A stretch of DNA of 64,000 bases from Haliotis cracherodii (GCF_022045235.1 NW_027266267.1:35154001-35218000); one strand, 5' to 3'. Counted from the first letter of the stretch, positions 406-55,834 are shown. The notes: generated from the letters alone by a model not told the origin. Numbers and translations are program-made.

Positions 406-409
406 ATTG

Positions 410-651: not shown

Positions 652-3600
652 GTAACATAAAGTGGGTTTTCTGAGACCTCTGCACAACTGTCCGCATCGC
701 TGATAGCTGTGAACAGACATGACGACCAATACCTTTGTTCATTTATCATATTTCTGTTATTATTACTCTTGTGATATGTGTTGATGTATATTCAGATAAG
801 CTATTTTATTACAAGGAGGGATAAGGAAATGATTTGACAGATGAGAGCTGTATGTTATTACTTTTTATGAAACTGACATTTAATCTTTACATCTGAAATG
901 CTTTATAACGCTGTCACCAATGTTCCAGTTTCATCTTCAATCACTTAACATCAAATTAGAATCTGATACCAAATAATAGTAATATATTCTGACGGTCATC
1001 AAAGAGGTGTAGTTTACCTTCTGTGACGTTTCCCTTTCTTCTCGTCCTTACAACACATACACAGATAACGATTACAATGAGGATGAAGATTCCTCCACCT
1101 GTCCCAGCAGCGATATACATGGTGTCATCTGAAAGAGAAAAGAGATACTGGACAAGTAAGTATACTGTCCTTGAACTTGGCACATGGATAAGTCTATATA
1201 AGTCAAGTTATGAGTATAAGTACTGAATAATCTAAGACAACATATCTTTTACATAAAGAGAGTCCATGCTGTATACATACTCAGATAGAGATGGTGACGT
1301 CCGTCTATGAGGAGCAATGATACGAAGTTACTAGTATTTCATTGATAATGTTTCACCATATAATTTAGTTTGATTGGGAAGTTTTCGAAGCACAATAAAG
1401 ATCTAGCTACCAGGGGGCGGTTGGGTAGCTTAGTGGTTATAGTGTTCGCTCGTAACGCCGAAAACACGGGTTCGATTCCCGCCATCGGTACAATGTGTGA
1501 CAACGCGTAACCTGATAGATACGAGTAACCTTTCATACAGAACTGTACAAAACTAGGTTTTAGGCATACTAAGCAGAGATGGAGATTATATATGAGTACT
1601 ACATTCTTAAGTTTCTGTAAGAAAACCTATAATTGCAATCATGGCCAACTAACATTATAATTCAGCTGATCCAACTTTTCTTCAGTTACCCGATGAAGTT
1701 AATAAGCACGTCGTTAGCAATAGGTGTATGGTCCATGTTTTTTTCCGTGCCACTTATCGTGGCGTGACGACAATATTGCTTACTCTGTTATTCATAATCG
1801 TTCATTCATGTACAATGACAAAGCTAAGTCAATATACGAACTTTAATCAAATGCCGCACCGAAATAATGGGGTTGATCTATCACAATATCATGTGAAAAC
1901 TGTAATGTCTAGAGCTATCACAGTACTGTTTGTTTTAAATGCACATTCAGTGCACATTGTTGCTATGTCTTGCTATGTCCTGGGTCAGTATATGGTTTTG
2001 TTATATATTCATGAATGTTTCTAAATATCCTATATATCGTACCCAAAGGTTAGTATGACGACTAGTACACAACTACCTTGATTATCGTTACTCGGGGCGG
2101 TAGATATCTTGATAGTTGTAAGATTTGCCAATGTTGTCAGCTGTGAACTTGTTTTATAAGTAGCCCCGTTAAAGCCTGACGACATAAATAATATATACAA
2201 ATAATTATGAAATTGGCTCGCTCACCACAGAGGACATAAAATAACACACTTCTATGGTTTGAATAATCCGATAGACGAGCCATATCATGTTCAATTAATG
2301 TTTAGTGTGTTTAGGAACGCACGTTCGAACATTTTACATACAAAGTTACTAAATGTGTGGATAGCTGAAACATATATTAGGTTAATGACATACAGAGGAT
2401 TATTAAAACAGATAAAATGGCTTTCGCTGGCATCAGTGTGAATGACATCACTGGTATCAATACAATGTATCTCTAAATATATAATACATCGTTAGTTTAA
2501 CTGATACAAATCTACCATGAGTATCGCTGTCTGTGATGATCGTTGTTGCTGAATCAGTCAGTGGTGTAGTTGGCTTATCAGTAGTCCCAGGAATGACTGC
2601 ATACATAAATAATATATATTATTTATGACATTTACTAGCTTAATATCGATACACATGAACAAGCGATTTTATATTGACCGCCTCCATGGTGAACTGGTTA
2701 GAGCGTTTGTCCTGAGAGGGGAAGATCCGTGGCTTTGACACCAGGCCAGGTCATACGACAAGGCATAGTATTCTCCTTCGGGAAAAACACGGTTTGGTCT
2801 GTTCGGAGTTAGTCTACTGTTTCTGAATGGGGAATGCATTTAAACTGCGCCACGCTGTCTGAGGTATCACTATGAAACAGGCATGTGTCCTGACNNNNNN
2901 NNNNNNNNNNNNNNNNNNNNNNNNNNNNNNNNNNNNNNNNNNNNNNNNNNNNNNNNNNNNNNNNNNNNNNNNNNNNNNNNNNNNNNNNNNNNNNNNNNNN
3001 NNNNNNNNNNNNNNNNNNNNNNNNNNNNNNNNNNNNNNNNNNNNNNNNNNNNNNNNNNNNNNNNNNNNNNNNNNNNNNNNNNNNNNNNNNNNNNNNNNNN
3101 NNNNNNNNNNNNNNNNNNNNNNNNNNNNNNNCTATATAAGTGGAGAAATGATGGACGCGACGTAACAATTTCACCTCACTCTCCGATAGTGCTAATACCG
3201 TATGTATCTATTGGTGACCGATTTATACAGTTCTTAATTTGTAGATGGCGTGTTCATAGTTCTTAAACATGTACGTATGGTTCCCAGGTATATATTTCAT
3301 GAATCAGCTACATCTGCATCCGTTCTTGCACAATCTGTCATAACATGATGTTATGAGATCAGAAAGGACACGTTGATGTAATCAAAGGAGTATGAGCGCA
3401 TAACAAAAAAGATCATACCCAACGTAAGGTTGTCACTGACTCTATTGCATTGATCCTCACACCGCCACACTGCCCCAGCTTTGATGTATTGAGTTGTAGT
3501 TAGTGTCATGTTGTGCTGGTTGTCACCACAGCTTACAATGCCATCATTTGATGTGAATAGGTCGTAACGATATGCAGTATCATTATTGGGTGGGTTTCTG

Positions 3601-4095
3601 TTACAACCATGATCATGACCTACAAACACTGACGTGAGAACTCGCACCTCATCCATATACCAATATCTGAAGGACGTGTTGATAGTGGTGTTGATGGCAC
3701 TGCAGACTAAGGTGATATTACCTCCTGACTGGAACTGAGTGAGTTCCAGAGGGAGACCACCTGCAACATTCCAAGATACAACCAGCATGAGAAGCAATCA
3801 CAACACAAACATGCAGTGGCATTCTTCGTCGTCCTTCATGTACTTACAATACCAAAATAACTGTAACATGCAAACACGAAACAGATAGGATATAAAGTGG
3901 TACAATCACTATTAAATTACACTTACGACATCCTGATGGTTCCATCCTTCGGGTGATTAGGAATTCAAACCTACTGTTATTTGTGTACGAAAACCATCCT
4001 ATACACAGCATGATTAGAAATTCAAACCTACTGTTATTTGTGTACGTAAACCATCCTATACACAGCAGAGTAATCAGGCGAATCCTTGTGTCCAT
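652..4095 (-). CDS. Ig-like single-pass receptor, copy A (tail type II; 3' end runs off the window)
   Basis: GT/AG exons in phase: leader 4095-4032 (MDTRIRLITLLCIGWFTYTNN), Ig 3760-3419 (LVC..YWY..GC..SC..WRC), stalk1 2596-2516 (VIPGTTDKPTTPLTDS..), stalk2 2175-2077, TM 1128-1018 (IAAGTGGGIFILIVIVICVCVV-RTRRK), cytoplasmic 706-652 (AISDADSCAEVSENPLYV). Joined frame is open. Confidence 0.8.
1413..1500 (+). mobile_element. SINE family 1, 5' half
   Basis: A box TAGCTTAGTGG and B box GGTTCGATTCC; 3' part deleted relative to 19710-19878. Confidence 0.75.
2676..3180 (+). mobile_element. Old tRNA-derived SINE in the Ig-stalk1 intron, present in all six copies
   Basis: Degenerate tRNA-like head, CA-rich middle, ggacgcgacgtaac end; paralogs at ~9192, ~14308, ~21151, ~37142 and ~53723. 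Confidence 0.55.
2895..3131. other. Assembly gap
   Basis: N run. Confidence 0.99.
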
Positions 4096-6289
4096 GTTTC
4101 TCCTTAATCAAACTTCCTCTCGTCAATATTCGGTTGAAATAAGTTACTACACATGAAATACACACAGAGCAACATGCAGCATTCTTCGTGAACAAACATT
4201 AGAGCTCCGCTATCTGTGAAATACATCCTTATGAAGGAGGAAATATTCCTACAATCAGCATTCGCTCACCTGCAGCTGTTTGTCCTGGTTTAGGTACTGA
4301 TAAATACATACCTTTAGATATTTTACACAAAGTACAACTTGCATTACTGCCAGTTTGCGGTCGCGCACAGTTGTCGGTACATATACCAAAGGGATAATGT
4401 TTCATTGTCTATCCTGGCGTATTTGGATCATGTAATCACTTTGTTGGTGGGGGGTTTACATTCTTCGTGTGATGTTAATGAGAACATACTAGACACTGTC
4501 AATTCATGAATACGTTTTAAGCTGTTTCTCTTTGCAGCATATCCGGGCCACGTAGATGTTAATTTTCATTTTGCCGAGGCTTTGCATAAGCGTTGTTATA
4601 AGAATAGAGGTTTTTTTTCTGAGCACCTGAAAGATAAACAATCATTTGGGATGTTCACATTGAAATAACCACGTGTGTGATAATCATATTCCATGCTAGC
4701 ATGCAAGCATCCAAATTGTCTGCCCCGGATTAAACATGCACGTCCAAACTGTGAATCACGACCTTAAAGTCAAGGATGTCTCCATGCATATGCACTGTAA
4801 GATGTATTATTAGTTTTTTTTAAATTCAATACTTTTCTTTTTATTAAAATTTATTAACCACAGTTATATATGCATATTTCCTTATCTAGAATAGTCATAC
4901 AATATCATTGTCCCCGTCGTAAGTGCGCTGAGTCATTTTGCACCAATTTTCCAGGTCTGCACCTTGTGTTGTAATCAAAAATGCATCTTACCAAAAAACT
5001 GTCCCATTGTCGATACTCGCTTACACATTCTGGTGGGTAGGAGTTACATAAACACAATATAAATATAACTTTAATGTGTGTTTTTTTTCAGGTCGTAGTA
5101 TATATCATGTTGTGGTGAAAGTAGTAATCTAGTTGTATTATACTGCAATGCTTGATGGAACATGCATGAGACACGAATTAATTGAAAACAAAGCCAGTAA
5201 TCTGTCAGCCTATCAAGCCTTTATTTCTACAGGAAGAGGACAATAAACATTGAATAGATACTCAAATAAAGCCGAACGAGTACCTCACACAATGTAATAG
5301 ATAATGTGAATTCAGGACATTCAACTATTGAGTTTCAGTCATTCACGCTTTCCTGTTAGAGATTCAGTGAACATGATATTTACACAACATATTACGTGGA
5401 TACCCTTTGCGTAACTAATGATTCCAAAGGGACAAGTAACAGATATATTTGAAGTGACACAAACACGAAATATACATTACAGATGCTAGTAATCCCCAGC
5501 TAAAATAATCACATATGCATGCTATATACAGGTCCTAACAACTGTTCAGATGATAAGATGAAAATAGGTTATGACACAATTTAAAACGTCAACACCATGG
5601 AACTAGTGTCGAATATCTGCCGAAAGGCAAAATAATGATGACAACCGCATGAATGCATCACTGAAAATCAGTTGTGACACCAGGTTTTACGAAAAAGGGT
5701 AAGCTTGTCTTGTCTTTTACAGCGGTACCTCCTATGCACAATTTTCATAAAACATGGTGTTTGTTTTTGCAACACCCAGCAATAATCCTGCTATACGACG
5801 ATACATCAGTAGTGACAAAATGTTTTTATTATACCAATGGCGTAATGTCATTATGATAATAGCTTAACATATTGGCCGAAAATGACACAAACACTGGAGG
5901 ATGTATATATATTTGCTGGTCTGACAACTTGAAACAGTGGTTTTCACACTACTATGTTCTCATTGGTGGATTTTCGTAGTCAGCATTCTCGGTCACAGTG
6001 TTGTAGTAAACATCGTTGGCATTTATGCTGGACTGTCTGGAGGCTTCCTTCTTGATCTCGGAGTAACAGGGATCTGTATTGCCATCGTGAGCCAAAGTGT
6101 CGTATTGAGGTGCGTCAACCTCAGCCAGTGATACATCTGTACAAACACAGATACAAATAAGGAGTGTTGTAGACACGAGTCATGTTTTACGTTACACACT
6201 GACACAAGATGCTTCACAACAGTTTATTTGTGATACAAAGCTCCACAGCATTAATATTGTTTATTATTTGTATGGAGATGATCTGTCAT

Positions 6290-7015
6290 AACCAGCTGTC
6301 AGCCAATGTTTGGCTGCCCTACTTGAGGTCAGTATGTTAATTGAGGATGAAATCTCCCGAATCAAAGAATCAGTAACATCAACTTTTGACTTGGCTGTAA
6401 AACCTGAAGACATATCCATTCCTCTTTCTTATTGTCACAGAAAATATTTGAGACAAATGGAATTATTACCATGTAGATTCTCCAAAAAATAAATGATTTG
6501 CTTGACTTTGTTACAAACTCTGAAAAGAACCAACTTCAATTATGTCAAAACATTTGACTTTTCAACTTTGTACACCACAATACCATATGGGAAACTTGAA
6601 GGAAAACTTAATGCCTTGAATCATGGGGCTTGTTTAAAAACATGGTGACCATATATAGCGTTACTTATTTATCATCAGATCTAGAGGTTCAGGTCAGTTT
6701 GTCAAACATGGAAGCAAATGCCCAAAAAAGGGATGACTTCAACTTTGCAGTGCTCAACGTTCACTTTGTTTAGAACAGTGTTCCATCAGCAAGAGCCCTT
6801 GGTGTTTTTCATTTCACAACTTTTGAGGTATTGTGCTCTTTCTACCAAGATCTCAAAGAGCGTCACACAACTCTTGCTCCGAAACTGATTGATCAGGATC
6901 ACAGCATTTAAGGCACCAGTAAAGCTTTCACAAAGATTGATTGTAGACATGTGGTGGAGATGTGGAATCACTATATGTCGACAGTATTTTGACACATGTA
7001 TTAAAATCCATTCTT
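6290..7015 (+). mobile_element. Penelope-like RT fragment, internally deleted
   Basis: VKTFDFSTLYTTIP and RDDFNF segments; paralog of 17600-18855. Confidence 0.6.
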
Positions 7016-7133
7016 TAAATCAGTAACGGCAAACGGTACAAGTACGACCTACAAATCACATGATATTAAATCAGTTTCTGAATACAAATAATTGTAAAAT
7101 ATTGCTACCCTCCTTACAAGAGGTGTAGATTAC

Positions 7134-7241
7134 CTTGCTTGACTTTTCAATTTCGTCTCCTGTAAACACCTACACAGATAACGATTACGATGAGGATCAT
7201 GATGCCAAACCCTGTCCCAGCAGCGATGTACATGGTGTCAT
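7134..7241 (-). other. Duplicate TM exon (TM2) of copy B with early stop
   Basis: DDTMYIAAGTGFGIMILIVIVICVGVYRRRN*; AAG acceptor and GT donor retained. Confidence 0.7.
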
Positions 7242-10200
7242 CTTGAACATGAAACTTATACTGGGCTACTGGGTGTCTGGTCCATGCTTAATGGTGTTGA
7301 TCTTTTAAAACTATAATGTGAAAAGCGGATTATCTAGAAATATAGCCTGAATGCTTTATAACGCTGTCATGAATGTTCTGGTTTGATCTTCAAATCACTT
7401 AATATCAAATTAGAATCTGATACCAAATAGTTCAAATTTGTTCTGACCGTCATCAAAGAGGTGTAGTTTACCTTGCTTGACGTTTCCCTTTCTTCTCGTC
7501 CTTACAACACATACACAGATAACGATTATAATGAGGATGAAGATTCCTCCACCTGTCCCAGCAGCAATATCTTGAAGAGAATAGAAATACTGGACTAGTA
7601 AGTATACTGTCCTTGAACTTGGCACATGGATAAGTCTATATAAGTACATTTATGTGTTCGTATATATAAGCAATGAGTATAAGTGCTGAATGATATAAGA
7701 CAACATAACTTTTACATAAAGAGAGTCCATGCTGTATACACGCAGATAGAGTTGGTGACCTCGATCTATGAGGAGCAATGATACGAAGTTACTAGTATTT
7801 ACTTGTTTCACAACATAATTTAGTTTGATTGGGACGTTTTTGAAAGGGAAATGTGATATATATAAAGCACAGTAAAGTTCTAGTTCCCAGGCACAATATA
7901 GTAAAATTAGAATAAGTGGAGTAAGATTAAACACAGTTTGAATTGGCTAACTCTTTCAACTCGTACCACGTATGAGTCTCATGAGGCCATAACTGAATAA
8001 CGAACATGAAGTTATGTAACGCGTAACCGGAGAGATACGAGTAACCTTTTATGCAGGACTGTACACAACTAGGTTTTAGGTATACAAGGCAGAGATGGAG
8101 ATTATATATGAGTACTACATTCTTAAGTTTCTGAATATCAGTAACCTTTAATTGCCGTCATGGCCAAATGACATTAGAATTCAGCTGATCCAACTTTTCT
8201 TCGGGTATCCGATGATGTTAATAAGCACGTCGTTAGTAATGGGTGTATGGTCCATGTTTTTTTCCATGCCGCTTATCGTGGCGTGACGACAATATTGCTT
8301 ACTCTGTTATTTATAATAGTTCATTCGTTTACAATGACAAAGCTAAGTCAATATAAGAAGTTTAATAAAATGCCGCACCGAAATAATGGGGTTGATCTAT
8401 CACAATAGCATGTGAAAACCGTAATGTCTAGAGAGCTATCACAGTACTGTCTGTTCAAATGCCACTCAGTGCACATTGTTGGTATGTCTTGGATCCTGGG
8501 TCAGTATATGGTTTTGTTATATATTCATGAATGTTTCTAAATATCCTATATATCGTACCCAAAGGTTAGTATGACGACTAGTACACAACTACCTTGATTA
8601 TCGTTACTCGGGGCAGTAGATATCTTGATAGTTGTAAGATTTGCCAATGTTGTCAGCTGTGAACTTGTTTTATAAGTAGCCCCGTTAAAGCCTGACGACA
8701 TAAATAATATATACAAATAATTATGAAATTGGCTCGCTCACCACAGAGGACATAAAATAACACACTTCTATGGTTTGAATAATCCGATAGACGAGCCATA
8801 TCATGTTCAATTAATGTTTAGTGTGTCTAGGAACGCACGTTCGAACATTTTACATACAAAGTTACTAAATGTGTGGATAGCTGATACATATATTAGTTCA
8901 AATAAATGCATTGAATTATTAAAACAGATAAAATGGCTTTCGCCGGCATAAGTGTAAATGACACAACTTGTATCCATACAATGTTTCTCTAAATATATAA
9001 TACATCGTTAGTTTAACTGATACAAATCTACCATGAGTATTGCTGTCTGTGGGGATCGTTGTTGCTGAATCAGTCAGTGATGTAGTTGACTTATCAGTAG
9101 TCCCTGGAATGGCTGCATACATAAATAATATATATTATTTGTGACATTTATTAGCTTAATATCGATACACATTAACAAACGATTTCATATTGACCGCCTC
9201 CATGGTCAACTGGTTAGAGCGTTTGTCCAGAGATGGGAAGATCCGTGGGTTTGACACCAGGTCAGGTCATACGAAAAGTCGTAGTTTTCACCCTGTCCGG
9301 TATCAAGGGGAAAACACGTGGTGTTGTCTGTTTGGAGTAAGTCTACTGTGTCTGAATGAGGCATGCATGTTAAACTGCGCCACGGTATCTGAGTGGGCAG
9401 ACACTATGAAACGGGAATTGTATACGGAATAATACAAGCAACCACACACAAACACACACGCACTCAATCACTACACACATACACACACAAACACGTGCAT
9501 GTACGTCGCTATATAAGGCGAGTAATCATGGACGCGACGTAACAAATTTCACCTCTCTTCCGATAGTGTTAACACCGGTTGTATCTCTGGGTGACCGTTT
9601 TATAAAGTGCCTCATCTGTAGATGTCGTGTTCATAGTTCTTGAACATTTACGTATGGTTCTCAGGTATATATTTCATGAATCAGTTACATCTGCATTCGT
9701 TCTGGCACAATATGTCATAGCATGATGTATGGGATCAGAAAGGACACGTTGATGTAAATAAAGGAGTATGAGCGCATGACAAAAAGATCATACCCAACGT
9801 AATGTTGTTACTGACTCTATTGCGTTCATCCTCACACCGCCACACAGTCCCAGCTTTGATGTATTGAGTTGTAGTTAGTGTCATGTTGTGCTGGTGGTCA
9901 CCACAGCTTACACCGACATCATTTGATGTGAATAGGTCGTAACGATATGCAGAAGTATCGTCTGTACCATTGGGTGGGTTTCTGGTACAACCAGTAACTG
10001 CAAACACTGACGTGAGAACTCGCACCTCATCTAAATACCAATATGTGAAGGAACTGGTTTTTTTCCAGGTCGGAGTATATATCATGTTGTGGTGAAAGTA
10101 GTAATCTAGTTGTATTATACTGCAATGCTTAATGGAACATGCACGAGACACGAATTAATTGAAAACAAAGCCAGTAATCTGTCAGCCTATCAAGCCTTTA

Positions 10201-10984: not shown

Positions 10985-13900
10985 CTATGTTCTCATTGGT
11001 GGATTTTCGTAGTCAGCATTCTCGGTCACAGTGTTGTAGTAAACATCGTTTGCATTTATGCTGGACTGTCTGGAGGCTTCCTTCTTGATCTCGGAGTAAC
11101 AGGGATCTGTACTGCCATCGTTAGCCAAAGTGTCGTATTGAGGTGCGTCAACCTCAGCCAGTGATACATCTGTACAAACACAGATATAAATAAGGAGTGT
11201 TGTAGACACGAGTCATGTTTTACGTTACACACTGACACAAGATGCTTCACAACAGTTTATTTGTGATACAAAGCTCCTCAGCATTAATATTGTTTATTAT
11301 TTGTATGGAGATGATCTGTCATAACCAACTGTCAGCCAATGATTGGCTGCCCTACTTGAGGTCAGTATGTTAATTGAGGATGAAATCTCTCGCATCAAAG
11401 AATCAGTAACATCAACTTTTGACTTGGCTGTAAAACCTGAAGACATATCCATTTCTCTTTCTTATTTTCACAGAAAATATTTGAGACAAATAGAATTATT
11501 ACCATGTAGATTCTCCAAAAAATAAATGATTTGCTTGACTTTGTTAGAAACTCTGAAAAGAACCAACTTCAATTATGTCAAAACATTTGACTTTTCAACT
11601 TTGTACACCACAATACCATATGGGAAACTTGAAGGAAAACTTAATGCCTTGAATCATGGGGCTTGTTTAAAAACATGGTGACCATATATAGCGTTACTTA
11701 TTTATCATCAGAGGTTCAGGTCAATTTGTCAAACATGGAAGCAAATGCCCAAAATAGGGATGACTTCAACTTTGCAGTGCTCAACGTTCACTTTGTGTGG
11801 AGCAGTGTTCTATCAGCAAGAGCCCTTGGTGTCTTCATTTCACAATTTTTGAGGTATTGTGCTCTTTCTACCAAGATCTCAAAGAGCGTCACACAACTCT
11901 TGCTCCGAAGCTGATTGATCAGGATCACAGCATTTAAGGCACCAGTAAAGCTTTCACAAAGATTGATTGTAGACATGTGGTGGAGATGTGGAATCACTAT
12001 ATGTTGACAGTATTTTGACACATGTATTAAAATCCATTCTTTAAATCAGTAACGGTAAACGGTACAAGTACAACCTACAAATCACATGATATTAAATCAG
12101 TTTCTGAATACAAATAATTGTAAAATATTGCTACCCTCCTTACAAGAGATGTAGATTACCTTGCTTGACTTTTCAATTTCGTCTCCTCTAAACACCTAAA
12201 CTGGTGACCCCCGCCGTGATATTGCTGGAATATTGCTAAAAGCGGCGTAAAACCATACTCACTCACTCACTCACTCACTAAACACCTAAACAGATAACGA
12301 TTACGATGAGGATCATGATGCCAAACCCTGTCCCAGCAGCGATGTACATGGTGTCATCTTGAACATGAAACTTATACTGGGCTAGTGGGTGTCTGGTCCA
12401 TGCTTAATGGTGTTGATCTTTTAAAACTATAATGTGAAAAGCGGATTATCTAGAAATATAGCCTGAATGCTTTATAACGCTGTCATGAATGTTCTGGTTT
12501 GATCTTCAAATCACTTAATATCAAATTAGAATCTGATACCAAATAGTTCAAATTTGTTCTGACCGTCATCAAAGAGGTGTAGTTTACCTTGCTTGACGTT
12601 TCCCTTTCTTCTCGTCCTTACAACACATACACAGATAACGATTATAATGAGGATGAAGATTCCTCCACCTGTCCCAGCAGCAATATCTTGAAGAGAATAG
12701 AAATACTGGACTAGTAAGTATACTGTCCTTGAACTTGGCACATGGATAAGTCTATATAAGTACATTTATGTGTTCGTATATATAAGCAATGAGTATAAGT
12801 GCTGAATGATATAAGACAACATAACTTTTACATAAAGAGAGTCCATGCTGTATACACGCAGATAGAGTTGGTGACCTCGATCTATGAGGAGCAATGATAC
12901 GAAGTTACTAGTATTTACTTGTTTCACAACATAATTTAGTTTGATTGGGACGTTTTTGAAAGGGAAATGTGATATATATAAAGCACAGTAAAGTTCTAGT
13001 TCCCAGGCACAATATAGTAAAATTAGAATAAGTGGAGTAAGATTAAACACAGTTTGAATTGGCTAACGCTTTCAACTCGTACCACGTATGAGTCTCATGA
13101 GGCCATAACTGAATAACGAACATGAAGTTATGTAACGCGTAACCTGATAGATACGAGTAACCTTTTATGCAGGACTGTACAAAACTAGGTTTTAGGCATA
13201 CAAGGCAGAGATGGAGATTATATATGAGTACTACATTCTTAAGTTTCTGAATATCAGTAACCTTTAATTGCCAGCATGGCCAAATAACATTAGAATTCAG
13301 CTGATCCAACTTTTCTTCGGGTATCCGATGATGTTAATAAGCACGTCGTTAGTAATGGGTGTATGGTCCATGTTTTTTTCCGTGCCGCTTATCGTGGCGT
13401 GACGACAATATTGCTTACTCTGTTATTTATAATAGTTCATTCGTTTACAATGACAAAGCTAAGTCAATATAAGAAGTTTAATAAAATGCCGCACCGAAAT
13501 AATGGGGTTGATCTATCACAATAGCATGTGAAAACCGTAATGTCTAGAGAGCTATCACAGTACTGTCTGTTCAAATGCCACTCAGTGCACATTGTTGGTA
13601 TGTCTTGGATCCTGGGTCAGTATATGGTTTTGTTATATATTCATGAATGTTTCTAAATATCCTATATATCGTACCCAAAGGTTAGTATGACGACTAGTAC
13701 ACAACTACCTTGATTATCGTTACTCGGGGCGGTAGATATCTTGATAGTTGTAAGATTTGCCAATGTTGTCAGCTGTGAACTTGTTTTATAAGTAGCCCCG
13801 TTAAAGCCTGACGACATAAATAATATATACAAATAATTATGAAATTGGCTCGCTCACCACAGAGGACATAAAATAACACACTTCTATAGTTTGAATAATC

Positions 13901-23444: not shown

Positions 23445-23568
23445 GTTGATGTGTATAGGTCGTAACTATATGCATAACTATCGTTTGTGCTGTTGGGTGG
23501 GTTCTTTGCACAGATATTCCCTGCAGACACTGACGTGAGAAGTCGGAAGTCATCCAGGTACCAATGTG

Positions 23569-30537: not shown

Positions 30538-30538
30538 T

Positions 30539-46158: not shown

Positions 46159-46190
<32 letters not shown>

Positions 46191-48660: not shown

Positions 48661-51600
48661 TTAGACTTCACTATACTCATTGTCGGCTTCGGACCAAGTA
48701 CTATCTGCAACAACCAATGCGTTTATGTCATCCACACATATTTCATCCAAATATCAACGTTGTCTTTCTGTCATAAATCCCTCAAGGGATGTTACATTTT
48801 GTAGGTAAGTTGTTTTACGCCTCAGTTAAATATTCCTGATGACATCCTTTAAATAGTCGAGTCTGGAGTAGACAAACCGACGGTTACTGTTATGGTAAAT
48901 GTTCCACATCGTTGGGCAAAGATGACACACTATGTACCAAGTTTGTTTGTTTGCTGTTTACGGTTTAACCGCGAATATTACAGCTTTTTGATGGGGTCTG
49001 TAAATCATCGATTATGGACCAGACAACACAGTGACTGATATCATGAGCATCTAAAACATTCGGATCCAATGACATGCATCGACCAAGTCACCGATTCTAA
49101 CCACCCGATGCCGTTAGTTGACTAATCAACCACGTCACCGAGCCAGACCAACCGACCCATTTAGAGCCTCTTACGACAAACATGGATAAGGAGACATATT
49201 CTAACTCCTAGTCCGGTCAATCGCACTTCCGTGTATACTTACATGTTCCGTTCTTTGTTTTTTCATGGACATGTCCGGTACGGCATACAGATCACCAATG
49301 TTCACAGCACTGCCTACAGCTGACTGGTGTTTGGGTGTCGTGCCCGGGACGCCGTACTTGTCACCATCATTGACAGCACAACGTACAGCTAGCTTGTGTT
49401 TGGGTGTCTTGTCTGGTACGGCATACAGATCACCAACGTCGACAGCGCCGCCAAGAGCAGGTATGTGTTCGGGTGTATTGTCTGGTACGGCAGTTGAATA
49501 TAGAATTATGGTGTTCATATTTCAACAAGTCACACCATATTATTCTCCCTAGATATTCTTCCTGAAATTATTAAGCTTAATTTAGAAGGCAACACTCAAA
49601 CTATAATCACAATACAATAGTCAGATATGTGATGAAGTGAAGAACACCACAACAGAAAAGACTTACAAGTGAAGAGCACCTTGTTGTCAACAGGTTCAAC
49701 TTGGTATCTGAAAAGAAATATCATATTGTTTTTAAGTTATTGCTCGTTTCAAACCTGGGAAAAATTTGCAGGAATAAGATTCAACATTTTCATGAATGAT
49801 ATTATTTTTTTTTCACATTTGAGGCGTTACCATTGATCTGTCAACTTGTGTCATCGTATCCCAAAAGGTGATGGGCGTTACCCACATTATCATTGGTTGG
49901 TTGGTGTGTTGTTTAACGCCACACTAAGCAATATATGACAAAGCTATATGACGGCGGTCTGTAAATAATTCAGTATGGACCAGACAAGCCAGTGCTGAAT
50001 ATCATCAGCATCGATCCGATCAATTGGGATCGATGATATGCACCAACCAAGCGTGACGATCCGATCCCGCTAGTCGCCTCTTACGACAAGCATGGCCGCC
50101 TTTACGCAGCATCAAGATCTAATGTGTCTATTTATAGTCCATTGTCCTCCAACAACATGCAACCAACGATCACGCTTATTAATACAATACAAATTTGAAA
50201 ATATTTTAGAACTACCTGCGGATACAAAAATGTGCGTTTTTAAAAAAAAAGAGTTGCATTATCATTATAAAAGAACAATTGTGAAGAAAATATTTGAACG
50301 ATGAACTACCCGTGATAAGGGTTGATGATGCGACCGTCGTTGTGTGTGTTAATTACATTAATGAATACATTTAAATGAAGGCGACAAGGTCACCCACATC
50401 TATGGAGAGTTTTGTGATGATAACAATTAATTAACGTATTATGTACTACATAAATGCGACAAAACCCTTTCCATATCTCCGCGAAAAACACAGTCGATTG
50501 TTCGATTCGGACTATATCATGAGCATGTGTTTATGAATCACTATTAAATAGTGATGATACCAGGTGTTCGCCCCATCAGCGACACCCGTCAAAAACACAT
50601 GCAAACACAAGTCAAATAATCACATGAAAAAAACCTACAAGTCTGAATAGGGACTGGAGCCTCAATGTTCCCAACGTGTCTACAGTGAACCTTTTTAAAG
50701 CTTTTCTGAGGCCAGGAATGTTTCCTCGAATGTTGTAACCTTGATCAAACAGCTTCTTAGCAAGTAATGTATTACGCTCTTTTTGAAATATTGATTGAAA
50801 GTGCATGCTCGAATGTTCTTCAAAAGTTGTGAAATGTAGACAGCAATAGCTGTACCTACTGGAATACTGCTTGACATAAAGGGAAAGTTGACTGTTGGAA
50901 AGTTGACGTCATCCCACTTGTCATGCAGTCTAGTGCTTTATCCCTCTGAATCTTTGTGCATAGTTCTACATAAGAAACAGACGAAGCGGTTTCATTTGTC
51001 TTCTTTATTTCTAGTTCAGGTGGGTAAATCAGTCTATTTGGTGGTTATTGAACGATTTCCGATACCTATGACAACAATATACCTATGACGACTCATACGG
51101 GCATTGAGGTGAGGTGAGGTGAGGTGAGGTGAGGTGAGGTGAGGTGAGGTGAGGTGAGGTGAAATCGGGTTTAACGTCCAAGATTTTTGCACTTACATAG
51201 CCACGCTCTACCACTAGACCACGGAGGCGGTCCCGGGCATTGAGCGATGAAATTCAAAGGTGGTATACAGTGGAAATACTTGACACTCTACTCACGTAAC
51301 ATAAAGTGGGTTTTCTGAGACCTCTGCACCATTGTCTGCATCGCTGATAGCTGTAAACAGACATGACGACCAATACCTTTGTTCATTTATCATATTTCTG
51401 TTATTATTACTCTTGTGATATGTGCATGTATATTCAAATAAGCTATTTTATCACAAGGAGGGGTAAGGAAATGATTTGACGGATGAGAGCTGTATGTTAT
51501 TAATTTTTATGAAACTGGTAGTTAATCTGTACATCTGAAATGTTTTATAACGCTGTCATGAATGTTCCAGTTTGATCTTCAAATCACTTAACATCAAATT

Positions 51601-54576
51601 AGAATCTGATATCAAATAGTTCAAATTTGTTCTGACCGTCATCAAAGAGGTGTAGTTTACCTTGCGTGACGTTTCCCTTTCTTCTCGTCCTTACAACACA
51701 TACACAGATAACGATTATAATGAGGATGAAGATTCCTCCTCCTGTACCAGCAGCGATGTACATGGTGTCATCTGGAAGTGAAAACAAATACTGGGCTAGT
51801 AAGTATAGTGTCCTTGTTCTTGGCACATGGATAAGTCTATATAAGTCAATCTATGAGTTCGTATATATAAGCAATGAGTATAAGTACTGAATAATCTAAG
51901 ACAACATATCTTTTACATGAAGAGAGTCCATGCTGTATACACGCAGATAGAGATGGTGACGTCCGTCTATGAGAAGCAATGATACGAAGTTACTAGTATT
52001 TACTTGATAGTGTTTCACCATATAATTTATTTTGATTGGGAAGCATAGTAAAGATCTAGCTCCCAGGGGGGCGGTCGGGTAGCCTAGTGGTTAAAGTGTT
52101 CGCTCGTCACGCCGAAGACCCAGGTTCCATTCCCGACATGGGTACAATTTGTAAGCCCATTTCTGGTGTCCCCCGACGTAGTATTGCTGGAATATTGCTA
52201 AAAGTGTCGTAAAACCAAATTCACTCACTCACTCCAGCTCTCAGGCACACTATAGTAAAATTGGAAAAAGTGGAGTAAGATTAAACACAGTTGTAATTGG
52301 CTAGCGCTTTCAGCTCCTGCAAAGTATGAGTCTCATGAGGCCATAACTGAATAACGAACATGAAGTTGTGTAACGCGTAACCCGATAGATACTAGTAACA
52401 TTTTATGCAGAACTATACAAAACTAGGTTTTAGGCATTCTAAGCAGAGATGGAGATTATATATGAGTACTACATTCTTAAGTTTCTGAATATCAGTAACC
52501 TTAAATTGCCATCATGGCCAAAAAACATTAGAATTCAGCTGATCCAACTCTACTTCGGTTACTCGATGACGTTAATAAGCATGTCGTTAGTAATGGGTGT
52601 GTGGTCCATGTTTTTTTCCGTGCCACTTATCGTGGCGTGACGACAATATTGCTTACTCTGTTATTTATAATAGTTCATTCGTTTACAATGACAAAGCTAA
52701 GTCAATCTAAGAAGTTTAATAAAATGCCGCACCGAAATAATGGGGTTGATCTATCACAATATCATGTGAAAACCGCAATGTCTAGAGAGCTATCACAGTA
52801 CTGTCTGTTTTAAATGTACATTCAGTGCACATTGTTGCTATGTCTTGCTATGTCCAGGGTCAGTATATGGTTTTGTTACATATTCAGGGCAGTCGGGTAG
52901 CCTAGTGGTTAAAGCGTTCGCTCGTCACGCCGAAGACCCGGGTTCGATTCCCGACATGGGTATATTGTGTGAAGCCCATTTCTTGTGTCCCCCGCCGTAG
53001 TATTGCTGGAATATTGCTAAAAGCGGCGTAAAACCATACTCACTCACTGTTATATATTCATGAATGTTTCTAAATATCATATATATCGTACCCAAAGGTT
53101 AGTATGACGACTAGTACACAACTACCTTGATTATCGTTGCTCGGGGCAGAAGTTATCTTGACAGTTGTAAGATTTGCCAACGTTGTCAGCTGTGAACTTC
53201 TCTTATAAGTAGTCCCGTGAAAGCCAGATGACATAAATAATATATGCAGATAATTATGAAGTTTGCTCGCTCACCACAGAGAACATAAAATAACACACTT
53301 CTATAGTTTGAATAATCCGATAGACGAGCCACATCATGTTCAATTGATGTTTAGTGTGTTTAGGAACGCACGTTCGAACATTTTACATACAAAGTTACGA
53401 AATGTGTGGATAGCTGATACATATATTAGGTCAATAACATGCATAGAATCATTAAAACAGATAAAATGGCTGTCGCCGGCATTAGTGTGAATGACATATC
53501 TGGTATCAATACAACGTTTCTCTAAATATATAATACATCGTTAGTTTAACTGATACAAATCTACCATGAGTATCGCTGTCTGTGGTGATCGTTGTTGCTG
53601 AATCTGTCAGTGGTGTAGTTGACTTATCAGCTGTCCCAGGAATGACTGTATACATAAATAATAAACATTATTTGTGACATTTACTAGCTTAATATCGATA
53701 CACATGAACAAGCGATTTAAATTGACCGCCTCCATGGTCAACCGGTTAGAGCGTTTGTCCTGAGAGGGGAAGACACCAGGCCAGGTCAAACGACAAGGCA
53801 TAGTATTTTCCTTGGGGAAAAACACGGTTTTGTCTGTTCAGAGTTAGTCTACTGTTTCTGAATGGGGAATGCATTTAAACTGCGCCACGCTATCTGAGGT
53901 ATCACTATGAAATACAAGCAATACAAGCAGCAACACACACGCGCGCGCATGACAAAAAGATCATACCTAGCGTAAGGTTGTTACTGACTCTCAGGCGTTG
54001 ATCCTCACACCGCCACACAGTGCCAGCTTGGGTGTATTGAGTTGTAGTTAGTGTCATGTTGTGCTGGTGGTCACCACAACTTACACTGCCATCATTTGAT
54101 GTGAATAGGTCGTAACGATATGCTGTATCATTGGCTGTGTTATTGGGTGCGTTTCTGTTACAACCATGACCTCCAAACACTGACGTGAGAACTCGCACCT
54201 CATTCATATACCAATTTGTGAAAGACGTGTTGAGAGTGGTGTTGATGGGACTGCAGACTAAGGTGACATTATCGCCTGACTGGAACTGATTGAGCTGTAG
54301 AAGAAGACCACCTGTAACATTCCAAGATACAACCAGCATGAGAAGCAATCACAACACAAACATGCAGTGGCATTCTTCGTCGTTCTTCATGTACTTACAA
54401 TACCCAAATAACTGTATGAAAAAGATAGGATATAAAGTCCTACAATCACTATTAAAATACACCTATGACATCCAAATGGTTCTATCCTTCACGATTAGAA
54501 ATTTAAACCTACTGTTATTTGTGTACGCAATCCTTCCTATACACAGTAGTGGAATCAGGTGAATCCTGGAGTCCAT
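48661..54576 (-). CDS. Ig-like receptor copy G (tail type II; stalk2 acceptor mutated)
   Basis: Leader 54576-54513, Ig 54311-53967, stalk1 53645-53565, stalk2 53224-53126 (acceptor TG), TM 51771-51661, NPLY exon 51350-51296, 41-nt exon 49707-49667. Candidate YAVP exon 49481-49243 and terminal segment 48704-48661; distal splicing is uncertain. Confidence 0.72.
50660..51105 (-). mobile_element. Penelope-like RT C-terminal fragment
   Basis: Paralog of 1-405 (MSSSIPVGTAIAVYISQLLKNIRAC). Confidence 0.6.
52066..52234 (+). mobile_element. SINE family 1
   Basis: A and B boxes, (CACT)n tail. Confidence 0.85.
52887..53047 (+). mobile_element. SINE family 1, specific to copy G
   Basis: TSD TGTTA(C/T)ATATTCA; empty in the paralogous introns. 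Confidence 0.88.
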
Positions 54577-54959
54577 GTTTATCCTAAATCAAACATGCTC
54601 TCGTCAACATTGATTAAGGTTTGGTTGAAATAACCCGGCGGAAGTTACTACACATGACATACACACAGAGCAACATGCAGCATTCTCCGCGATCTAACAA
54701 GAGAGCTCCACCAAATATGAAATACATCCTTATAAAGGAGGAACTATTCCTACAATCAGCATTCAGCTGTTTTTTCCTGGTTTAGGTATTCACGAATACA
54801 TACCTGTTATATCGGTAACAAGGACAAATTCACCATGTACGTTCTGAAGGGTTGGTGTTCGAAGTGGGATTGTACTATTTTTTCCTGACTAGTACAAACA
54901 GCCACACACAACAACTAACACTGTGATATAATCTTGAACGCAATGTTAAACTCCTTTTC

Positions 54960-55834
54960 ATCATACACTGACATCCGTTGAAGTGAAAAGGTCGTAACTA
55001 TTTGCATAACTATTGCCTGTGTTGTTGGGTGTGTTTTTTGCACAGACATTCCCTGCAAACACTAACTTGAGAACTCGTACGTCATCCACATACCTTTGTG
55101 TAAACTCCATGTAGATAGTGGTGTCAGTAGTGCTGCAGACAAATGTGACATCATCGACTGACTGGAAATGAGTGAGTTCTAGAGGGAGACCGCCTGCAAT
55201 ATTCCAGGTACAACCAGCACATACATGAAGGTACTAAGTATTGAGTTGTAGTCAGTGTCATGTTGTGCTGTCATCCTTTGATGTGTACAGGTCGTCGCAT
55301 TATCAGCTGTAATGTTGGGTGAGTGTTTGGTACAGACATTACCTGCTCCCACTGACGTGATAACTAGCTCCTCATCTTTATCAATGTGTAAATTACATGT
55401 CGATAGTTTTATTGGTCGTGATTTTCACTCTTCAATACCTGTCATGTTGGAATTCCCACGACGTGCACAAACAAAAGTGGTAAGGGAGTACTTTTCAATG
55501 CTTCGATCGCGATACAATTACACGACATACACCATATCTATACGTATATAATAGATAATTCAATACTTTGTATAATGTTGGTTGGTTGGTTGGTTTGTTG
55601 TTTAACACCGCACTCAGCAATATTCCAGCTATATGTAAATAATCGAGTCTGGACCAGACAACCCAGTGATTAATATCATGAACATCGATCCACGCAATTG
55701 GGATCGATGACATGCATCAACCAAGTCAGCGAGCTTGACCACCGGATCCTGTTAGTCTTGACACAGGGTAACCTACGTGTGTCCGTTATCTGTCCTATCA
55801 ACAACAGAGTAGTCAGGTATACGAAACAGCCCAT
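54960..55834 (-). pseudogene. E-type Ig paralog 3 (leader plus truncated Ig)
   Basis: Leader 55834-55777; Ig from 55193 (GLPLELTHFQSVDDVTFVC..) ends at SV* like paralog 2. Confidence 0.7.

What the first reader, a model, noticed from the sequence alone, without database searches (positions are those of the whole stretch)
652..55834. Tandem cluster of variable single-Ig membrane receptors: candidate undescribed invertebrate immune or allorecognition locus
Seen: six co-oriented genes (leader, Ig, two stalk exons, TM, Tyr-motif tail) plus three degenerate paralogs; the ORF track shows only fragments of them. Established: this layout matches vertebrate paired-receptor clusters (CD300, TREM, fish NITR) and the Hydractinia Alr complex; polymorphic TM-gene clusters are known in Biomphalaria (GRC, PTC2). 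Inference: this is a lineage-specific recognition receptor family under birth-and-death evolution. I recognise no named gene for it.
Basis: partly seen in the sequence, partly recalled or inferred. Interest (0 to 1): 0.9.

Follow-up and report, generated by a model that had tools for sequence, protein, structure and literature searches.

The report
Abalone-only cluster of single-Ig receptors
The window holds part of a real tandem array of black-abalone genes for membrane receptors with one antibody-like (V-type Ig) domain, a sugar-coated stalk and tyrosine-motif tails. The family is found only in abalones, has about 100 copies on one Ig-rich chromosome, and its function is untested.

Summary
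On the minus strand there are six co-oriented paralogs and three decayed Ig remnants. Their layout is leader, one Ig exon, two stalk exons, a transmembrane (TM) exon and a tyrosine-motif tail. Introns are GT..AG and phase 1.

**Gene state.** Three copies are intact: c1, c3 and c5. Two have a damaged stalk-2 exon (c4, c6). One (c2) is a 5'-truncated duplicate.

**Gaps.** The three N gaps lie in an intron, a pseudogene and a spacer. Their flanks are colinear with paralogous units.

**Fold.** The Ig exon is invisible to Pfam. With 49 paralogs as alignment it folds confidently (pLDDT 82) into a V-set Ig domain (VIA Z 10-11).

**Transcripts.** Spliced contigs confirm the stalk1-stalk2-TM junctions. 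RefSeq already models these genes, but only as "uncharacterized protein".

**Distribution.** Relatives were found only in Haliotis. The genome (H. cracherodii) has at least 106 such Ig exons, 97 of them on the chromosome that also holds most ordinary Ig_2 domains. Hirase et al. 2025 reported Ig enrichment on one such structurally variable chromosome in abalones.

**Evolution.** Ectodomain loops evolve near neutrally (dN/dS 0.9). Tail A is constrained (0.38) and all its tyrosine motifs are invariant.

An immune role is inferred, not shown; allorecognition is unlikely. I file it as a new member of a known kind. The scan has two notes on this window and one on other Ig arrays in this genome.

The parts
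652..4095 (-). Copy c1 (long-tail type B). Exons: leader 4032-4095, Ig 3419-3760, stalk1 2516-2596, stalk2 2077-2175, TM 1018-1128, NPLY exon 652-706. The remaining tail exons lie about 1.6-2.2 kb below the window start. Intact.
   Evidence: Most exons match RefSeq XP_071095265.1 (P0018, 380 aa) at 97-100%, the Ig, stalk-1 and tail-B exons at 100%. Splice sites checked.
2895..3131 (.). Assembly gap inside intron 2 of c1. It is not in coding sequence.
   Evidence: The flanks are colinear with c5 intron 2 (37065-37359 and 37476-37761), so about 116 bp is missing. In c3 this stretch is a TG microsatellite.
5952..10056 (-). Copy c2 (tail A), 5'-truncated. Exons: Ig fragment 9794-10056 (from codon 28), stalk1 9032-9112, stalk2 8593-8691, TM 7472-7570, tail A 5952-6136. 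It has no leader and no promoter of its own.
   Evidence: The segment 7163-10056 is 99% identical to 12279-15172, and the duplication breakpoint falls inside the Ig exon. The RefSeq model P0025 starts at an internal Met and has no signal peptide.
10985..15525 (-). Exons: leader 15462-15525, Ig 14910-15254, stalk1 14148-14228, stalk2 13709-13807, TM 12588-12686, tail A 10985-11169.
   Evidence: Every intron is GT..AG and phase 1, and the joined frame is open. H. rufescens XP_048254008.1 (P0001) has the same exon layout. Spliced contigs join stalk1, stalk2 and TM.
17268..22322 (-). Copy c4 (tail A). Exons: leader 22259-22322, Ig 21757-22101, stalk1 20991-21071, stalk2 20554-20644 (8-nt deletion, frameshift), TM 19295-19405, tail A 17268-17452. 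The frame stays open only if stalk2 is skipped.
   Evidence: RefSeq P0023 (169 aa) ends by read-through after stalk1.
23142..24306 (-). Degenerate paralog 1: a leader-like piece and scrambled Ig fragments. Gap 22837-22969 lies just below it, between its Ig 3' part and a stalk-intron fragment.
   Evidence: Fragmentary blastn matches at 77-92% identity; flank analysis.
31282..31451 (.). Assembly gap in the intergenic spacer of the 16-kb repeat unit.
   Evidence: The flanks match 46504-46885 and 46936-47167 at about 98% identity. The paralogous unit has only about 50 bp between them.
33268..38384 (-). Copy c5 (tail B without the NPLY exon), intact, 339 codons. Exons: leader 38321-38384, Ig 37762-38106, stalk1 36981-37061, stalk2 36548-36646, TM 35273-35372 (100 nt, one extra base), mini-exon 34280-34320, tail B 33846-34088, last exon 33268-33311.
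   Evidence: The extra base in the TM exon restores the frame that was lost when the 55-nt NPLY exon was deleted.
38767..39164 (-). Degenerate paralog 2: a scrambled Ig remnant with stops.
   Evidence: 2 TGA, 1 TAA.
48661..54576 (-). Copy c6 (tail B). Exons: leader 54513-54576, Ig 53967-54311, stalk1 53565-53645, stalk2 53126-53224 (acceptor AG changed to TG), TM 51661-51771, NPLY exon 51296-51350, mini-exon 49667-49707, tail B 49239-49481, last exon 48661-48704.
   Evidence: The frame is open (361 codons, or 328 if stalk2 is skipped).
54964..55912 (-). Degenerate paralog 3: an Ig remnant at 54964-55377 with stops, and a leader-like ORF at 55676-55912. It is the counterpart of an intact H. rufescens gene (LOC125381481, P0002).
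   Evidence: The N-terminus of P0002 matches the ORF at 55676-55912.
12281..12357 (-). A second, degenerate TM-like exon downstream of the TM exon in the tail-A copies (also at 7134-7241 and 18971-19078). It would stop right after the membrane span.

Best explanation
**What it is.** The window carries six members of a Haliotis-restricted family of type I membrane glycoproteins. The cluster holds at least eleven members over about 120 kb.

**Architecture.** Each gene encodes, in order:
- a signal peptide;
- one V-set Ig domain with six N-glycosylation sequons and a second disulphide pair;
- a Ser/Thr-rich (41%) mucin-like stalk of about 58 residues;
- one TM helix followed by a basic stop-transfer stretch;
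- one of two cytoplasmic tails.

**The two tails.**
- Tail A (61 residues) carries YDTL-x9-YSEI (ITAM-like), VYYNTV (ITIM consensus) and YENP (YxN).
- Tail B carries NPLY, three or four repeats of a Y-A-V-P motif (YxxP), and a terminal SEYSEI/V (ITIM consensus).

**Proposed mechanism (inferred, not shown).** The variable, membrane-distal loops of the Ig domain bind an external ligand on a microbe or a cell. Clustering then leads to tyrosine phosphorylation of the tail and recruitment of SH2 or PTB proteins. Different tails on near-identical ectodomains would give different signalling outputs. The most likely setting is innate immune or other cell-surface recognition.

**How the array grows and decays.** It changes by unequal crossing-over, using units of about 5.1 kb and about 16 kb. 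This produces live genes, chimeras, truncated copies and pseudogenes.

**Shown:** gene structure, Ig fold, partial transcription, genus restriction, family size and the pattern of constraint.

**Inferred:** ligand binding, phosphorylation and any immune role.
For: **Gene models**
- Splice sites and phases are conserved in six copies.
- The RefSeq proteins P0018 and P0001 have the same exon order.
- Spliced contigs in two of three runs join 14147|13806 and 13709|12686, with GT..AG on the minus strand.

**Ig fold**
- The family profile hits only V domains in the PDB, best E 1e-6.
- AF2 with 49 paralogs gives pLDDT 81.9 and pTM 0.77.
- Foldseek top hits are VHH and TCR V-beta domains, probability 1.0, TM 0.57-0.67.
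- VIA-align gives Z 10-11.3 over 93-101 of 114 residues; all hits are V domains, CD8-alpha among them.
- Cys19, Trp33 and Cys101 are invariant in 21 paralogs.
- A distant member, P0009, passes the Pfam V-set cut-off (38.9 bits against 26).

**Constraint**
- dN/dS is 0.44 in strands and 0.90 in top loops.
- dN/dS is 0.38 in tail A, and every tyrosine motif is invariant in c2, c3, c4 and e8, H. rufescens P0001 and H. rubra P0003.
- The TM exon is the least diverged part (p-distance 0.06, against 0.10-0.125 in introns).

**Family and setting**
- At least 106 Ig exons in the genome, 99 of them without stops and 97 on contig C4.
- 115 of the best 150 Ig_2 matches are also on C4.
- PMC12627906 reports Ig-domain enrichment, haplotype non-synteny and copy-number variation on one abalone chromosome.
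Against: - There are no tissue, haemocyte or challenge expression data. The three runs are only guessed to be RNA, they cover the Ig exon barely, and they come from one study.
- Within the window the Ig exon diverges as fast as the introns (0.107 against 0.10-0.125; dN/dS about 1.05). Relaxed constraint could explain this as well as diversifying selection.
- Half of the six copies carry a defect.
- In a relative (P0006) the tail-B repeat has Phe where these copies have Tyr, so that motif may not work through phosphotyrosine.
- In c5 and c6 the strong GTAAGT donor puts the last exon, with its ITIM-like motif, out of frame. Only a weaker donor 4 nt downstream keeps it in frame.
- Motif matches are short and common by chance.
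Confidence: 0.6

Rival explanations
1. The same proteins act as cell-adhesion or tissue-recognition molecules, for example in neural or epithelial contacts, and have nothing to do with defence.
For: Single-V-domain TM proteins such as MPZ, the JAM/CAR relatives and CD8-like folds are often adhesion molecules (established knowledge; CD8-alpha is among the VIA hits). Hirase et al. describe the Ig genes of the Ig-rich chromosome as NCAM-like. NPxY and YxxP motifs are also typical of adhesion and engulfment signalling.
Against: Adhesion molecules are usually conserved across phyla and are single-copy or few-copy. This family is genus-restricted, has about 100 Ig exons, shows fast loop evolution and turns over quickly.
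Confidence: 0.15
2. The family serves gamete or reproductive recognition, another fast-evolving system that is well known in abalones.
For: Abalone fertilisation proteins (lysin, VERL) evolve fast and are lineage-specific (established knowledge). [quoted passage not shown]
Against: There is no similarity to lysin, sp18, or VERL/ZP proteins. Long tyrosine-motif signalling tails and about 100 paralogs are not features of the known gamete-recognition proteins. No gonad expression data exist either way.
Confidence: 0.07
3. The window's array is mostly evolutionary debris. On this view it is a recently amplified segment whose copies drift neutrally towards pseudogenes, and only one or two members, such as c1, are functional.
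For: Ig-exon divergence equals intron divergence and dN/dS is about 1 within the window. Three of the six copies carry defects and three further remnants are present. RefSeq could build only odd models for c2, c4 and c5: truncated, read-through and chimeric.
Against: All five full Ig exons, at about 10% divergence, keep open frames, only in-frame indels and intact splice sites. The true remnants, by contrast, have stops. A 1-nt insertion in c5 exactly restores the frame after the exon loss. Tail A and the TM exon are constrained. Strands are more constrained than loops. Transcripts of c3-like copies exist.
Confidence: 0.13
4. It is an allorecognition (self/non-self histocompatibility) locus like the Hydractinia Alr complex or the Botryllus receptors.
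For: It shares the general design: a cluster of divergent Ig-like TM genes with ITAM/ITIM-like tails (10.1101/2022.03.04.482883 and PMC12582321, listed). It sits on a chromosome with haplotype non-synteny.
Against: Abalones are solitary and do not fuse, so there is no known allorecognition phenotype (established knowledge). No sequence link to Alr or any non-Haliotis protein was found. Allelic polymorphism was not measured.
Confidence: 0.03

Closest known systems
Ig-domain expansion on the 'non-syntenic homologous chromosome' Chr4 of Haliotis gigantea (Hirase et al. 2025, PMC12627906)
   Same: It is the same genus. One chromosome is strongly enriched in Ig-domain genes made by repeated tandem and segmental duplication, with haplotype differences and copy-number variation. 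[quoted passage not shown] Here, 115 of the best 150 Ig_2 matches and 97 of 106 family Ig exons lie on one 45.3-Mb contig.
   Different: That paper counts Pfam-recognisable Ig_2 domains and calls the genes NCAM-like. The present family is almost invisible to Pfam, so it was probably under-counted. Its single-V, mucin-stalk, tyrosine-tail architecture and its two tail types are not described there. I did not test whether my contig C4 is orthologous to their Chr4.
Teleost NITR/NILT and mammalian CD300/TREM/NKp44 clusters (single V-type Ig receptors in tandem arrays)
   Same: One V-type Ig domain, a stalk, a TM helix and ITIM- or ITAM-type motifs. The genes sit in tandem clusters with pseudogenes and lineage-specific turnover, and the domain exon is bounded by phase-1 introns.
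   Different: There is no detectable sequence relationship beyond the generic V fold. No activating partner with a charged TM residue and a short tail exists here; both tail types are long. The extra Cys pair and the W-x-C in place of Y-x-C in strand F are peculiar to this family.
TIM family (T-cell Ig and mucin domain proteins)
   Same: The same four-part architecture: IgV, an O-glycosylated mucin stalk, TM, and a tail with tyrosine motifs. The genes are tandemly clustered.
   Different: TIM V domains have six cysteines and a metal-dependent phosphatidylserine pocket. These have four cysteines, and no such pocket was tested. No sequence hit was found.
Biomphalaria GRC and PTC2 clusters of polymorphic single-pass TM genes (PMC7494358)
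   Same: Both are gastropod clusters of fast-evolving single-pass TM genes of about 170-530 codons. They have no recognised domain and no homologues outside a narrow clade, and copies are present or absent between haplotypes.
   Different: PTC2 and GRC are defined by extreme allelic polymorphism and a mapped resistance phenotype; neither was tested here. No Biomphalaria protein appeared in any search. Here the 'domain-less' ectodomain turned out to be a cryptic V-set Ig.
Hydractinia Alr family
   Same: A cluster of tens of genes with divergent V-set/I-set-like domains that standard profiles miss, and with ITAM/ITIM-like tails.
   Different: Alr proteins have several domains and a proven allorecognition role in a colonial animal. 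The abalone proteins have one domain and no such biology, and no homology was detected.
Oyster CgIgIT2 (five Ig domains, TM, ITAM; PMC11999971)
   Same: A molluscan Ig-type TM receptor with a tyrosine activation motif, expressed in haemolymph.
   Different: It has five Ig domains and a classic ITAM, and it is not reported as a large tandem family. It did not appear as a hit in any search.

Membership tests
Immunoglobulin superfamily, V-set domain | Two-sheet beta sandwich with V-type strand order, including C' and C'' | tested here: met
   AF2 with 49 paralogs gives pLDDT 81.9 and nine strands. Foldseek top hits are VHH and TCR V-beta domains, probability 1.0. VIA gives Z 10-11.3, rmsd 2.4-2.9 A, 93-101 of 114 residues aligned.
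Immunoglobulin superfamily, V-set domain | Cys (strand B), Trp (strand C) and Cys (strand F) core triad | tested here: met
   C19, W33 and C101 are invariant in 21 paralogs. W33 is invariant and both cysteines are at least 90% conserved in 49. Strand F reads W-x-C instead of Y-x-C.
Immunoglobulin superfamily, V-set domain | Match to the Pfam V-set / Ig profiles above the curated cut-off | tested here: inconclusive
   The window copies reach only 12-14 bits. A distant family member, P0009, passes V-set (38.9 bits against 26). Others are sub-threshold. The family profile against PDB V domains gives E 1e-6.
Immunoglobulin superfamily, V-set domain | Domain encoded by one exon bounded by phase-1 introns | tested here: met
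   The Ig exon is 342-345 nt with phase 1 on both sides in all five full copies.
Paired activating/inhibitory receptor clusters (KIR, CD300, TREM, NITR type) | Activating members with a short tail and a charged TM residue that recruits an ITAM adaptor | tested here: not met
   The TM segments contain no charged residue. Both tail types are long: 61 residues, or about 130-150.
Paired activating/inhibitory receptor clusters (KIR, CD300, TREM, NITR type) | Inhibitory members with the ITIM consensus (S/I/V/L)xYxx(I/V/L) | tested here: met
   VYYNTV occurs in tail A and SEYSEI/V at the end of tail B. This is a sequence pattern only; phosphorylation and phosphatase binding cannot be tested here.
Paired activating/inhibitory receptor clusters (KIR, CD300, TREM, NITR type) | Sequence homology to a named vertebrate family | tested here: not met
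   All significant hits are Haliotis proteins.
ITAM-bearing receptors | YxxL/I, a 6-8 residue spacer (up to 12 in relaxed definitions), then YxxL/I | tested here: inconclusive
   Tail A has YDTL, nine residues, then YSEI. This fits the relaxed consensus but not the classical one. The motif is invariant across four paralogs and two other species.
Biomphalaria GRC/PTC2-type polymorphic TM1 clusters | Extreme allelic and presence/absence polymorphism between haplotypes | not tested
There are only two hints. A c3-like transcript carries 12 nt that are absent from the reference c3, and copy-number variation is published for the Ig-rich chromosome.
Biomphalaria GRC/PTC2-type polymorphic TM1 clusters | Cluster of single-pass TM genes restricted to a narrow gastropod clade | tested here: met
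   At least 11 clustered members over about 120 kb, and Haliotis-only hits.
Hydractinia Alr allorecognition family | Homology to Alr genes and a fusion/rejection phenotype | tested here: not met
   No cnidarian hit in any search. The phenotype is not applicable to a solitary gastropod (established knowledge).

The most novel reading that the evidence does not exclude
The roughly 100-member family is the abalone's own germline-encoded, haplotype-variable repertoire of V-type recognition receptors. On this reading it would be a molluscan counterpart of NITR/KIR-like systems. Loop-diversified ectodomains would be wired to alternative activating, inhibitory or engulfment tails. Repertoire differences between individuals, on the structurally unstable Ig-rich chromosome, would then contribute to differences in resistance to withering syndrome, vibrios or abalone herpesvirus. 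It would also suggest that the 'domain-less' polymorphic TM clusters of other gastropods (GRC, PTC2) may hide cryptic Ig folds.
Probability: 0.15. Interest if true: 0.8.

Novelty: new member of a known kind. Interest (0 to 1): 0.5.

Why it matters
Abalones are farmed and several species are endangered by disease, yet their cell-surface recognition receptors are almost unknown. This family matters for four reasons:
- It is large, at about 100 Ig exons.
- It is genus-specific.
- Domain databases miss it.
- It sits on the chromosome already known for haplotype non-synteny and copy-number variation.

That makes it a concrete, testable candidate for variable innate recognition. It also shows that 'uncharacterized, no-domain' single-pass TM clusters in molluscs can be resolved into Ig receptors by folding them with their paralogs as the alignment.

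If the family is only adhesion-related or decaying, it still shows that the Ig content of that chromosome has been under-counted.

Tried and rejected
**Searches and folds that gave little**
- Pfam on single exons found nothing above cut-off.
- phmmer of one Ig exon against the PDB gave only weak V-domain hints, E 0.03-1.
- AF2 with only the five window paralogs failed (pLDDT 46). It worked only with 49 diverse paralogs.
- Pfam on ten spacer ORFs of the 16-kb unit found nothing.
- A search of papers for the RefSeq locus and accession numbers found none.
- The black-abalone ancient-DNA paper names selected regions on other scaffolds and does not mention Ig genes.
- The ESM Atlas gave only unnamed mollusc clusters, followed by generic V-set families.

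**Ideas I dropped**
- I first read the 12 extra letters in the spliced contigs as a micro-exon. That is wrong. They are the first 12 nt of the TM exon as found in c1, c4 and c6, and they are deleted in c2, c3 and c5.
- RefSeq's c2 model instead uses a different 12-nt micro-exon with a GC donor (7624-7635). The contigs do not support it.
- The 'paired receptor' reading fails because no TM segment carries a charged residue.

**Tools and steps not used**
- Both went on c3, so I could not test expression of c1, c5 and c6, tissue, or allelic diversity.
- Joined exon models were translated only inside scripts, to check reading frames. Searches went exon by exon by reference, or used database proteins that the tools had returned.

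Full report
**Source and setting.**
- The window is G000:C4:35154001-35218000 of a 1.18-Gb assembly.
One of these, XP_071095265.1 (P0018), matches most window exons at 97-100%, the Ig, stalk-1 and tail-B exons at 100%. The genome is therefore the black abalone.
- GC content is about 38% and the sequence is a typical intron-rich animal genome.

**The observation.**
- Self-comparison shows the region is built from repeated units at 85-99% DNA identity, introns included. A short unit of about 5.1 kb covers 7163-10056 and 12279-15172 at 99%. A long unit of about 16 kb covers 37740-44250 and 53945-60346 at 90%.
  - leader 15525-15462;
  - Ig 15254-14910;
  - stalk 1 14228-14148;
  - stalk 2 13807-13709;
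  - TM 12686-12588;
  - tail 11169-10985.
- Every intron in c3 is GT..AG and phase 1. The internal exons are multiples of three. The joined frame is open for 290 codons.
- Mapping these exons back on the window finds six co-oriented copies and three clusters of degenerate Ig pieces.
- The H. rufescens protein XP_048254008.1 (P0001, 293 aa) has exactly this exon order.

**Two tail types.**
- c2, c3 and c4 end in a single 61-residue exon, tail A.
- c1, c5 and c6 have a longer tail B. It is made of a 55-nt NPLY exon, a 41-nt mini-exon, a repeat exon with three or four Y-A-V-P motifs, and a short last exon ending SEYSEI/V. RefSeq P0018 confirms this order for c1.

**Integrity of the six copies.**
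- c1, c3 and c5 are intact.
- c5 has lost the NPLY exon in a roughly 1-kb deletion and carries one extra base at the end of its TM exon. That base moves the exon end from phase 1 to phase 2 and so restores the frame into the mini-exon.
- c4 has an 8-nt deletion in stalk 2.
- c6 has lost the stalk-2 acceptor (AG to TG).
- Stalk 2 is a symmetrical phase 1-1 exon in the intact copies, so skipping it would keep c4 and c6 in frame. Only RNA data can decide whether that happens.
- c2 starts at Ig codon 28, at the breakpoint of the 99%-identical duplication (10056/10057). It has no leader.
- In c5 and c6 the strong GTAAGT donor at the end of the repeat exon is in phase 0. The last exon is then in frame only through a weaker GTATAC donor 4 nt downstream. 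c1, as modelled by RefSeq, reads straight through in frame.

**The RefSeq models for this locus are uneven.**
- c4 is a 169-aa read-through product.
- c5 is modelled as a chimera that splices its ectodomain exons to the TM and tail exons of c4, 19 kb away.
- c2 uses a 12-nt micro-exon with a GC donor.

**Gaps.**
- Gap 2895-3131 lies in intron 2 of c1. Its flanks align to c5 at 37065-37359 and 37476-37761, so about 116 bp of intron is missing. In c3 that stretch is a TG microsatellite.
- Gap 22837-22969 lies within a pseudogene remnant, between its Ig 3' part and a stalk-intron fragment.
- Gap 31282-31451 lies in spacer. Its flanks align to 46504-46885 and 46936-47167.
- Order and strand are colinear across all three gaps, and none interrupts an exon of a live copy. 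I did not try to fill them.

**Transcription.**
- Laid on 10900-15700, contigs in two runs skip 13807-14146 and 12687-13708. The skipped stretches begin and end CT..AC on the plus strand, which is GT..AG on the minus strand. This joins stalk 1, stalk 2 and TM as in my model.
- Between stalk 2 and TM the contigs carry 12 extra letters. These are the first 12 nt of the TM exon as present in c1, c4 and c6 (DDTMY), and they are deleted in c2, c3 and c5.
- The contig matches c3 exactly in stalk 1. It therefore comes from a c3-like allele or copy that is not in the reference, which hints at variation between individuals.
- Coverage of the Ig and tail exons is thin. Nothing can be said about tissue or expression level.

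**The ectodomain is a V-set Ig domain.**
- Single exons give nothing in Pfam and only weak V-domain hints against the PDB.
- A profile of 21 paralogs hits more than 2,000 PDB chains at E up to 1. The best 60 shown are TCR V-beta, antibody and other engineered V domains, best E 1e-6.
- AF2 with five close paralogs failed (pLDDT 46). With 49 Ig exons from this genome, down to 17% identity, it gave pLDDT 81.9 and pTM 0.77 with nine strands.
- Foldseek returns VHH, VH and TCR V-beta domains (probability 1.0, TM 0.57-0.67).
- The Foldseek-independent VIA search gives Z 10-11.3, rmsd 2.4-2.9 A over 93-101 of 114 residues. All hits are V domains, including CD8-alpha.
- The B-strand Cys, C-strand Trp and F-strand Cys are invariant. 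A second Cys pair (positions 50 and 78) is nearly so.
- One distant member (P0009, H. rubra) passes the Pfam V-set cut-off.

**The rest of the protein.**
- The Ig domain has six N-x-S/T sequons.
- The two stalk exons are 41% Ser/Thr.
- The TM segment has no charged residue and is followed by R-T-R-R-K.
- Tail A carries YDTL-x9-YSEI, VYYNTV and YENP.
- These motifs are unchanged in c2, c3, c4, the neighbour e8, H. rufescens P0001 and H. rubra P0003. H. rubra lies on the other side of the deepest split in the genus according to PMC12627906.

**Distribution.**
- A HMMER scan of 1.84 billion representatives found 17 proteins at E up to 0.001. The real hits are all Haliotis 'uncharacterized' proteins; the three I judged spurious are repetitive sequences.
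- Three word-index searches, one with a 12-protein full-length profile, again found only H. cracherodii, H. rufescens, H. rubra and H. asinina.
- Within the genome the 21-sequence profile finds at least 106 Ig exons. Of these, 99 have no stops and 97 lie on contig C4. They form clusters at about 7.2, 8.8, 9.8-10.1, 12.4-13.0, 26-27.4, 29.2-29.4, 31.9, 33.6-34.1, 35.15-35.27 and 38.3 Mb. Seven more lie on C18.
- The window's cluster continues for about 55 kb above the window and holds at least eleven members, one on the opposite strand.
- The same contig holds 115 of the best 150 matches to Pfam Ig_2, although it is only 3.8% of the genome.
- This fits Hirase et al. 2025 (PMC12627906). They report that one 'non-syntenic homologous chromosome' of H. 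gigantea is enriched in Ig domains through repeated duplication, differs between haplotypes and varies in copy number. They report similar patterns in H. cracherodii and H. rufescens.
- Because the present family is nearly invisible to Pfam, it was probably under-counted there.

**Evolution.**
- Within the window the Ig exon is as diverged as the introns (p-distance 0.107 against 0.10-0.125). The TM exon is less diverged, at 0.06.
- Pairwise dN/dS of the Ig exon averages about 1.05.
- With eight close paralogs, and the AF2 secondary structure as a guide, dN/dS is 0.44 in strands, 0.90 in the BC, C'C'', DE and FG loops, and 0.59 overall.
- Tail A gives 0.38, falling to 0.2-0.35 against the most distant copy.
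- So the framework and the signalling tail are constrained, while the putative binding loops change at about the neutral rate. This is the pattern of a diversifying receptor, but it does not prove positive selection.
- All five full Ig exons keep open frames with only in-frame indels, whereas the remnants have stops. This argues against plain decay.
- A tree places c1 with two H. rufescens genes (support 99/95) and c2 with c3 (100/99); the rest is unresolved.
- The third remnant has an intact counterpart in H. rufescens (P0002).
- Together these observations support birth-and-death turnover.

**Function.**
- What is shown is a glycosylated single-V receptor architecture with conserved tyrosine motifs.
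- Everything about ligand, phosphorylation and biological role is inference.
- I rank the possible roles as follows:
  1. Innate immune or other surface recognition is most likely. The family is large, clade-specific, clustered and fast in its loops, with ITIM/ITAM-like, NPxY and YxxP tails.
  2. Adhesion.
  3. Largely decaying copies.
  4. Gamete recognition.
  5. Allorecognition is least likely, because abalones are solitary.
- The 'paired receptor' analogy fails its defining test, since there is no charged TM residue and no short tail.
- The closest analogues by design are NITR/CD300-type clusters, the TIM family (IgV, mucin stalk, TM, tyrosine tail) and the Biomphalaria PTC2/GRC clusters. 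PTC2 genes are described as having no known domain (PMC7494358).
- No sequence homology to any of these was found.

**Verdict.**
- The feature is real and correctly described.
- It is a previously undescribed but already gene-modelled family, and belongs to a known kind of system.
- The chromosome-level Ig expansion is already published, and function remains open. I therefore score interest as moderate.

**Limits.**
- Joined models were used only in scripts to check frames, and none was sent to a search.

Noticed in passing
window 12201-12248 (related copies at 23277-23400, 40623-40745, 56791-56913, 19756-19878, 35722-35840 and others): A short dispersed repeat reaches a summed contig depth above 200,000 in all three runs, with many different flanks. 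It is probably a very abundant SINE-like or small-RNA-derived element.
   Followed up: no
window 17829-18401 (+) and 11343-11914 (+): An ORF with reverse-transcriptase-like motifs sits in the intron between the TM and tail-A exons of c3 and c4. Pfam gave no hit. It is probably a decayed retroelement fragment.
   Followed up: partly
window 28066-28638, 43680-44250, 59799-60501: A tandem repeat with a period of about 70 bp lies in the spacer of each 16-kb unit.
   Followed up: no
window 38384-36548 joined to 19406-17268: The RefSeq model P0024 splices the leader, Ig and stalk exons of c5 to the TM and tail-A exons of c4, across 19 kb and over the pseudogene remnant. It is either a prediction artefact guided by the H. 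rufescens protein or a real read-through transcript.
   Followed up: partly
window 7624-7635 and 12740-12751 (-): The RefSeq model of c2 (P0025) inserts four residues (LSMY) from a 12-nt micro-exon with a GC donor. The spliced contigs instead carry the 12 nt that begin the TM exon in c1 and c6 (c4 differs by one base), so they come from a c3-like copy or allele that is not in the reference.
   Followed up: partly
window 7134-7241, 12281-12357, 18971-19078 (-): A second, diverged TM-like exon lies about 330 bp downstream of the TM exon in each tail-A copy, with an AG in front and a stop just after the membrane span. If spliced, it would give a tail-less membrane form.
   Followed up: no
window 337-567 and 51037-51253 (-): A microsatellite that reads as (TSPHL)n in one frame lies in the intron after the NPLY exon of c1 and c6. 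It is absent from c5, together with the NPLY exon.
   Followed up: no
G000 contig C4, whole: 115 of the best 150 Ig_2 (PF13895) matches in the genome lie on this one 45.3-Mb contig, in dense arrays at about 11.5-11.9 Mb and 16.3-18.5 Mb. The scan's note s1-829630 on decayed multi-Ig arrays may belong to the same phenomenon.
   Followed up: partly
window 21071-20974, and H. rufescens P0022: In two species a gene model ends by reading from stalk 1 into the intron (GRFVSV...). This would give a secreted Ig-plus-half-stalk form. It could be a real soluble isoform or a shared annotation artefact.
   Followed up: no
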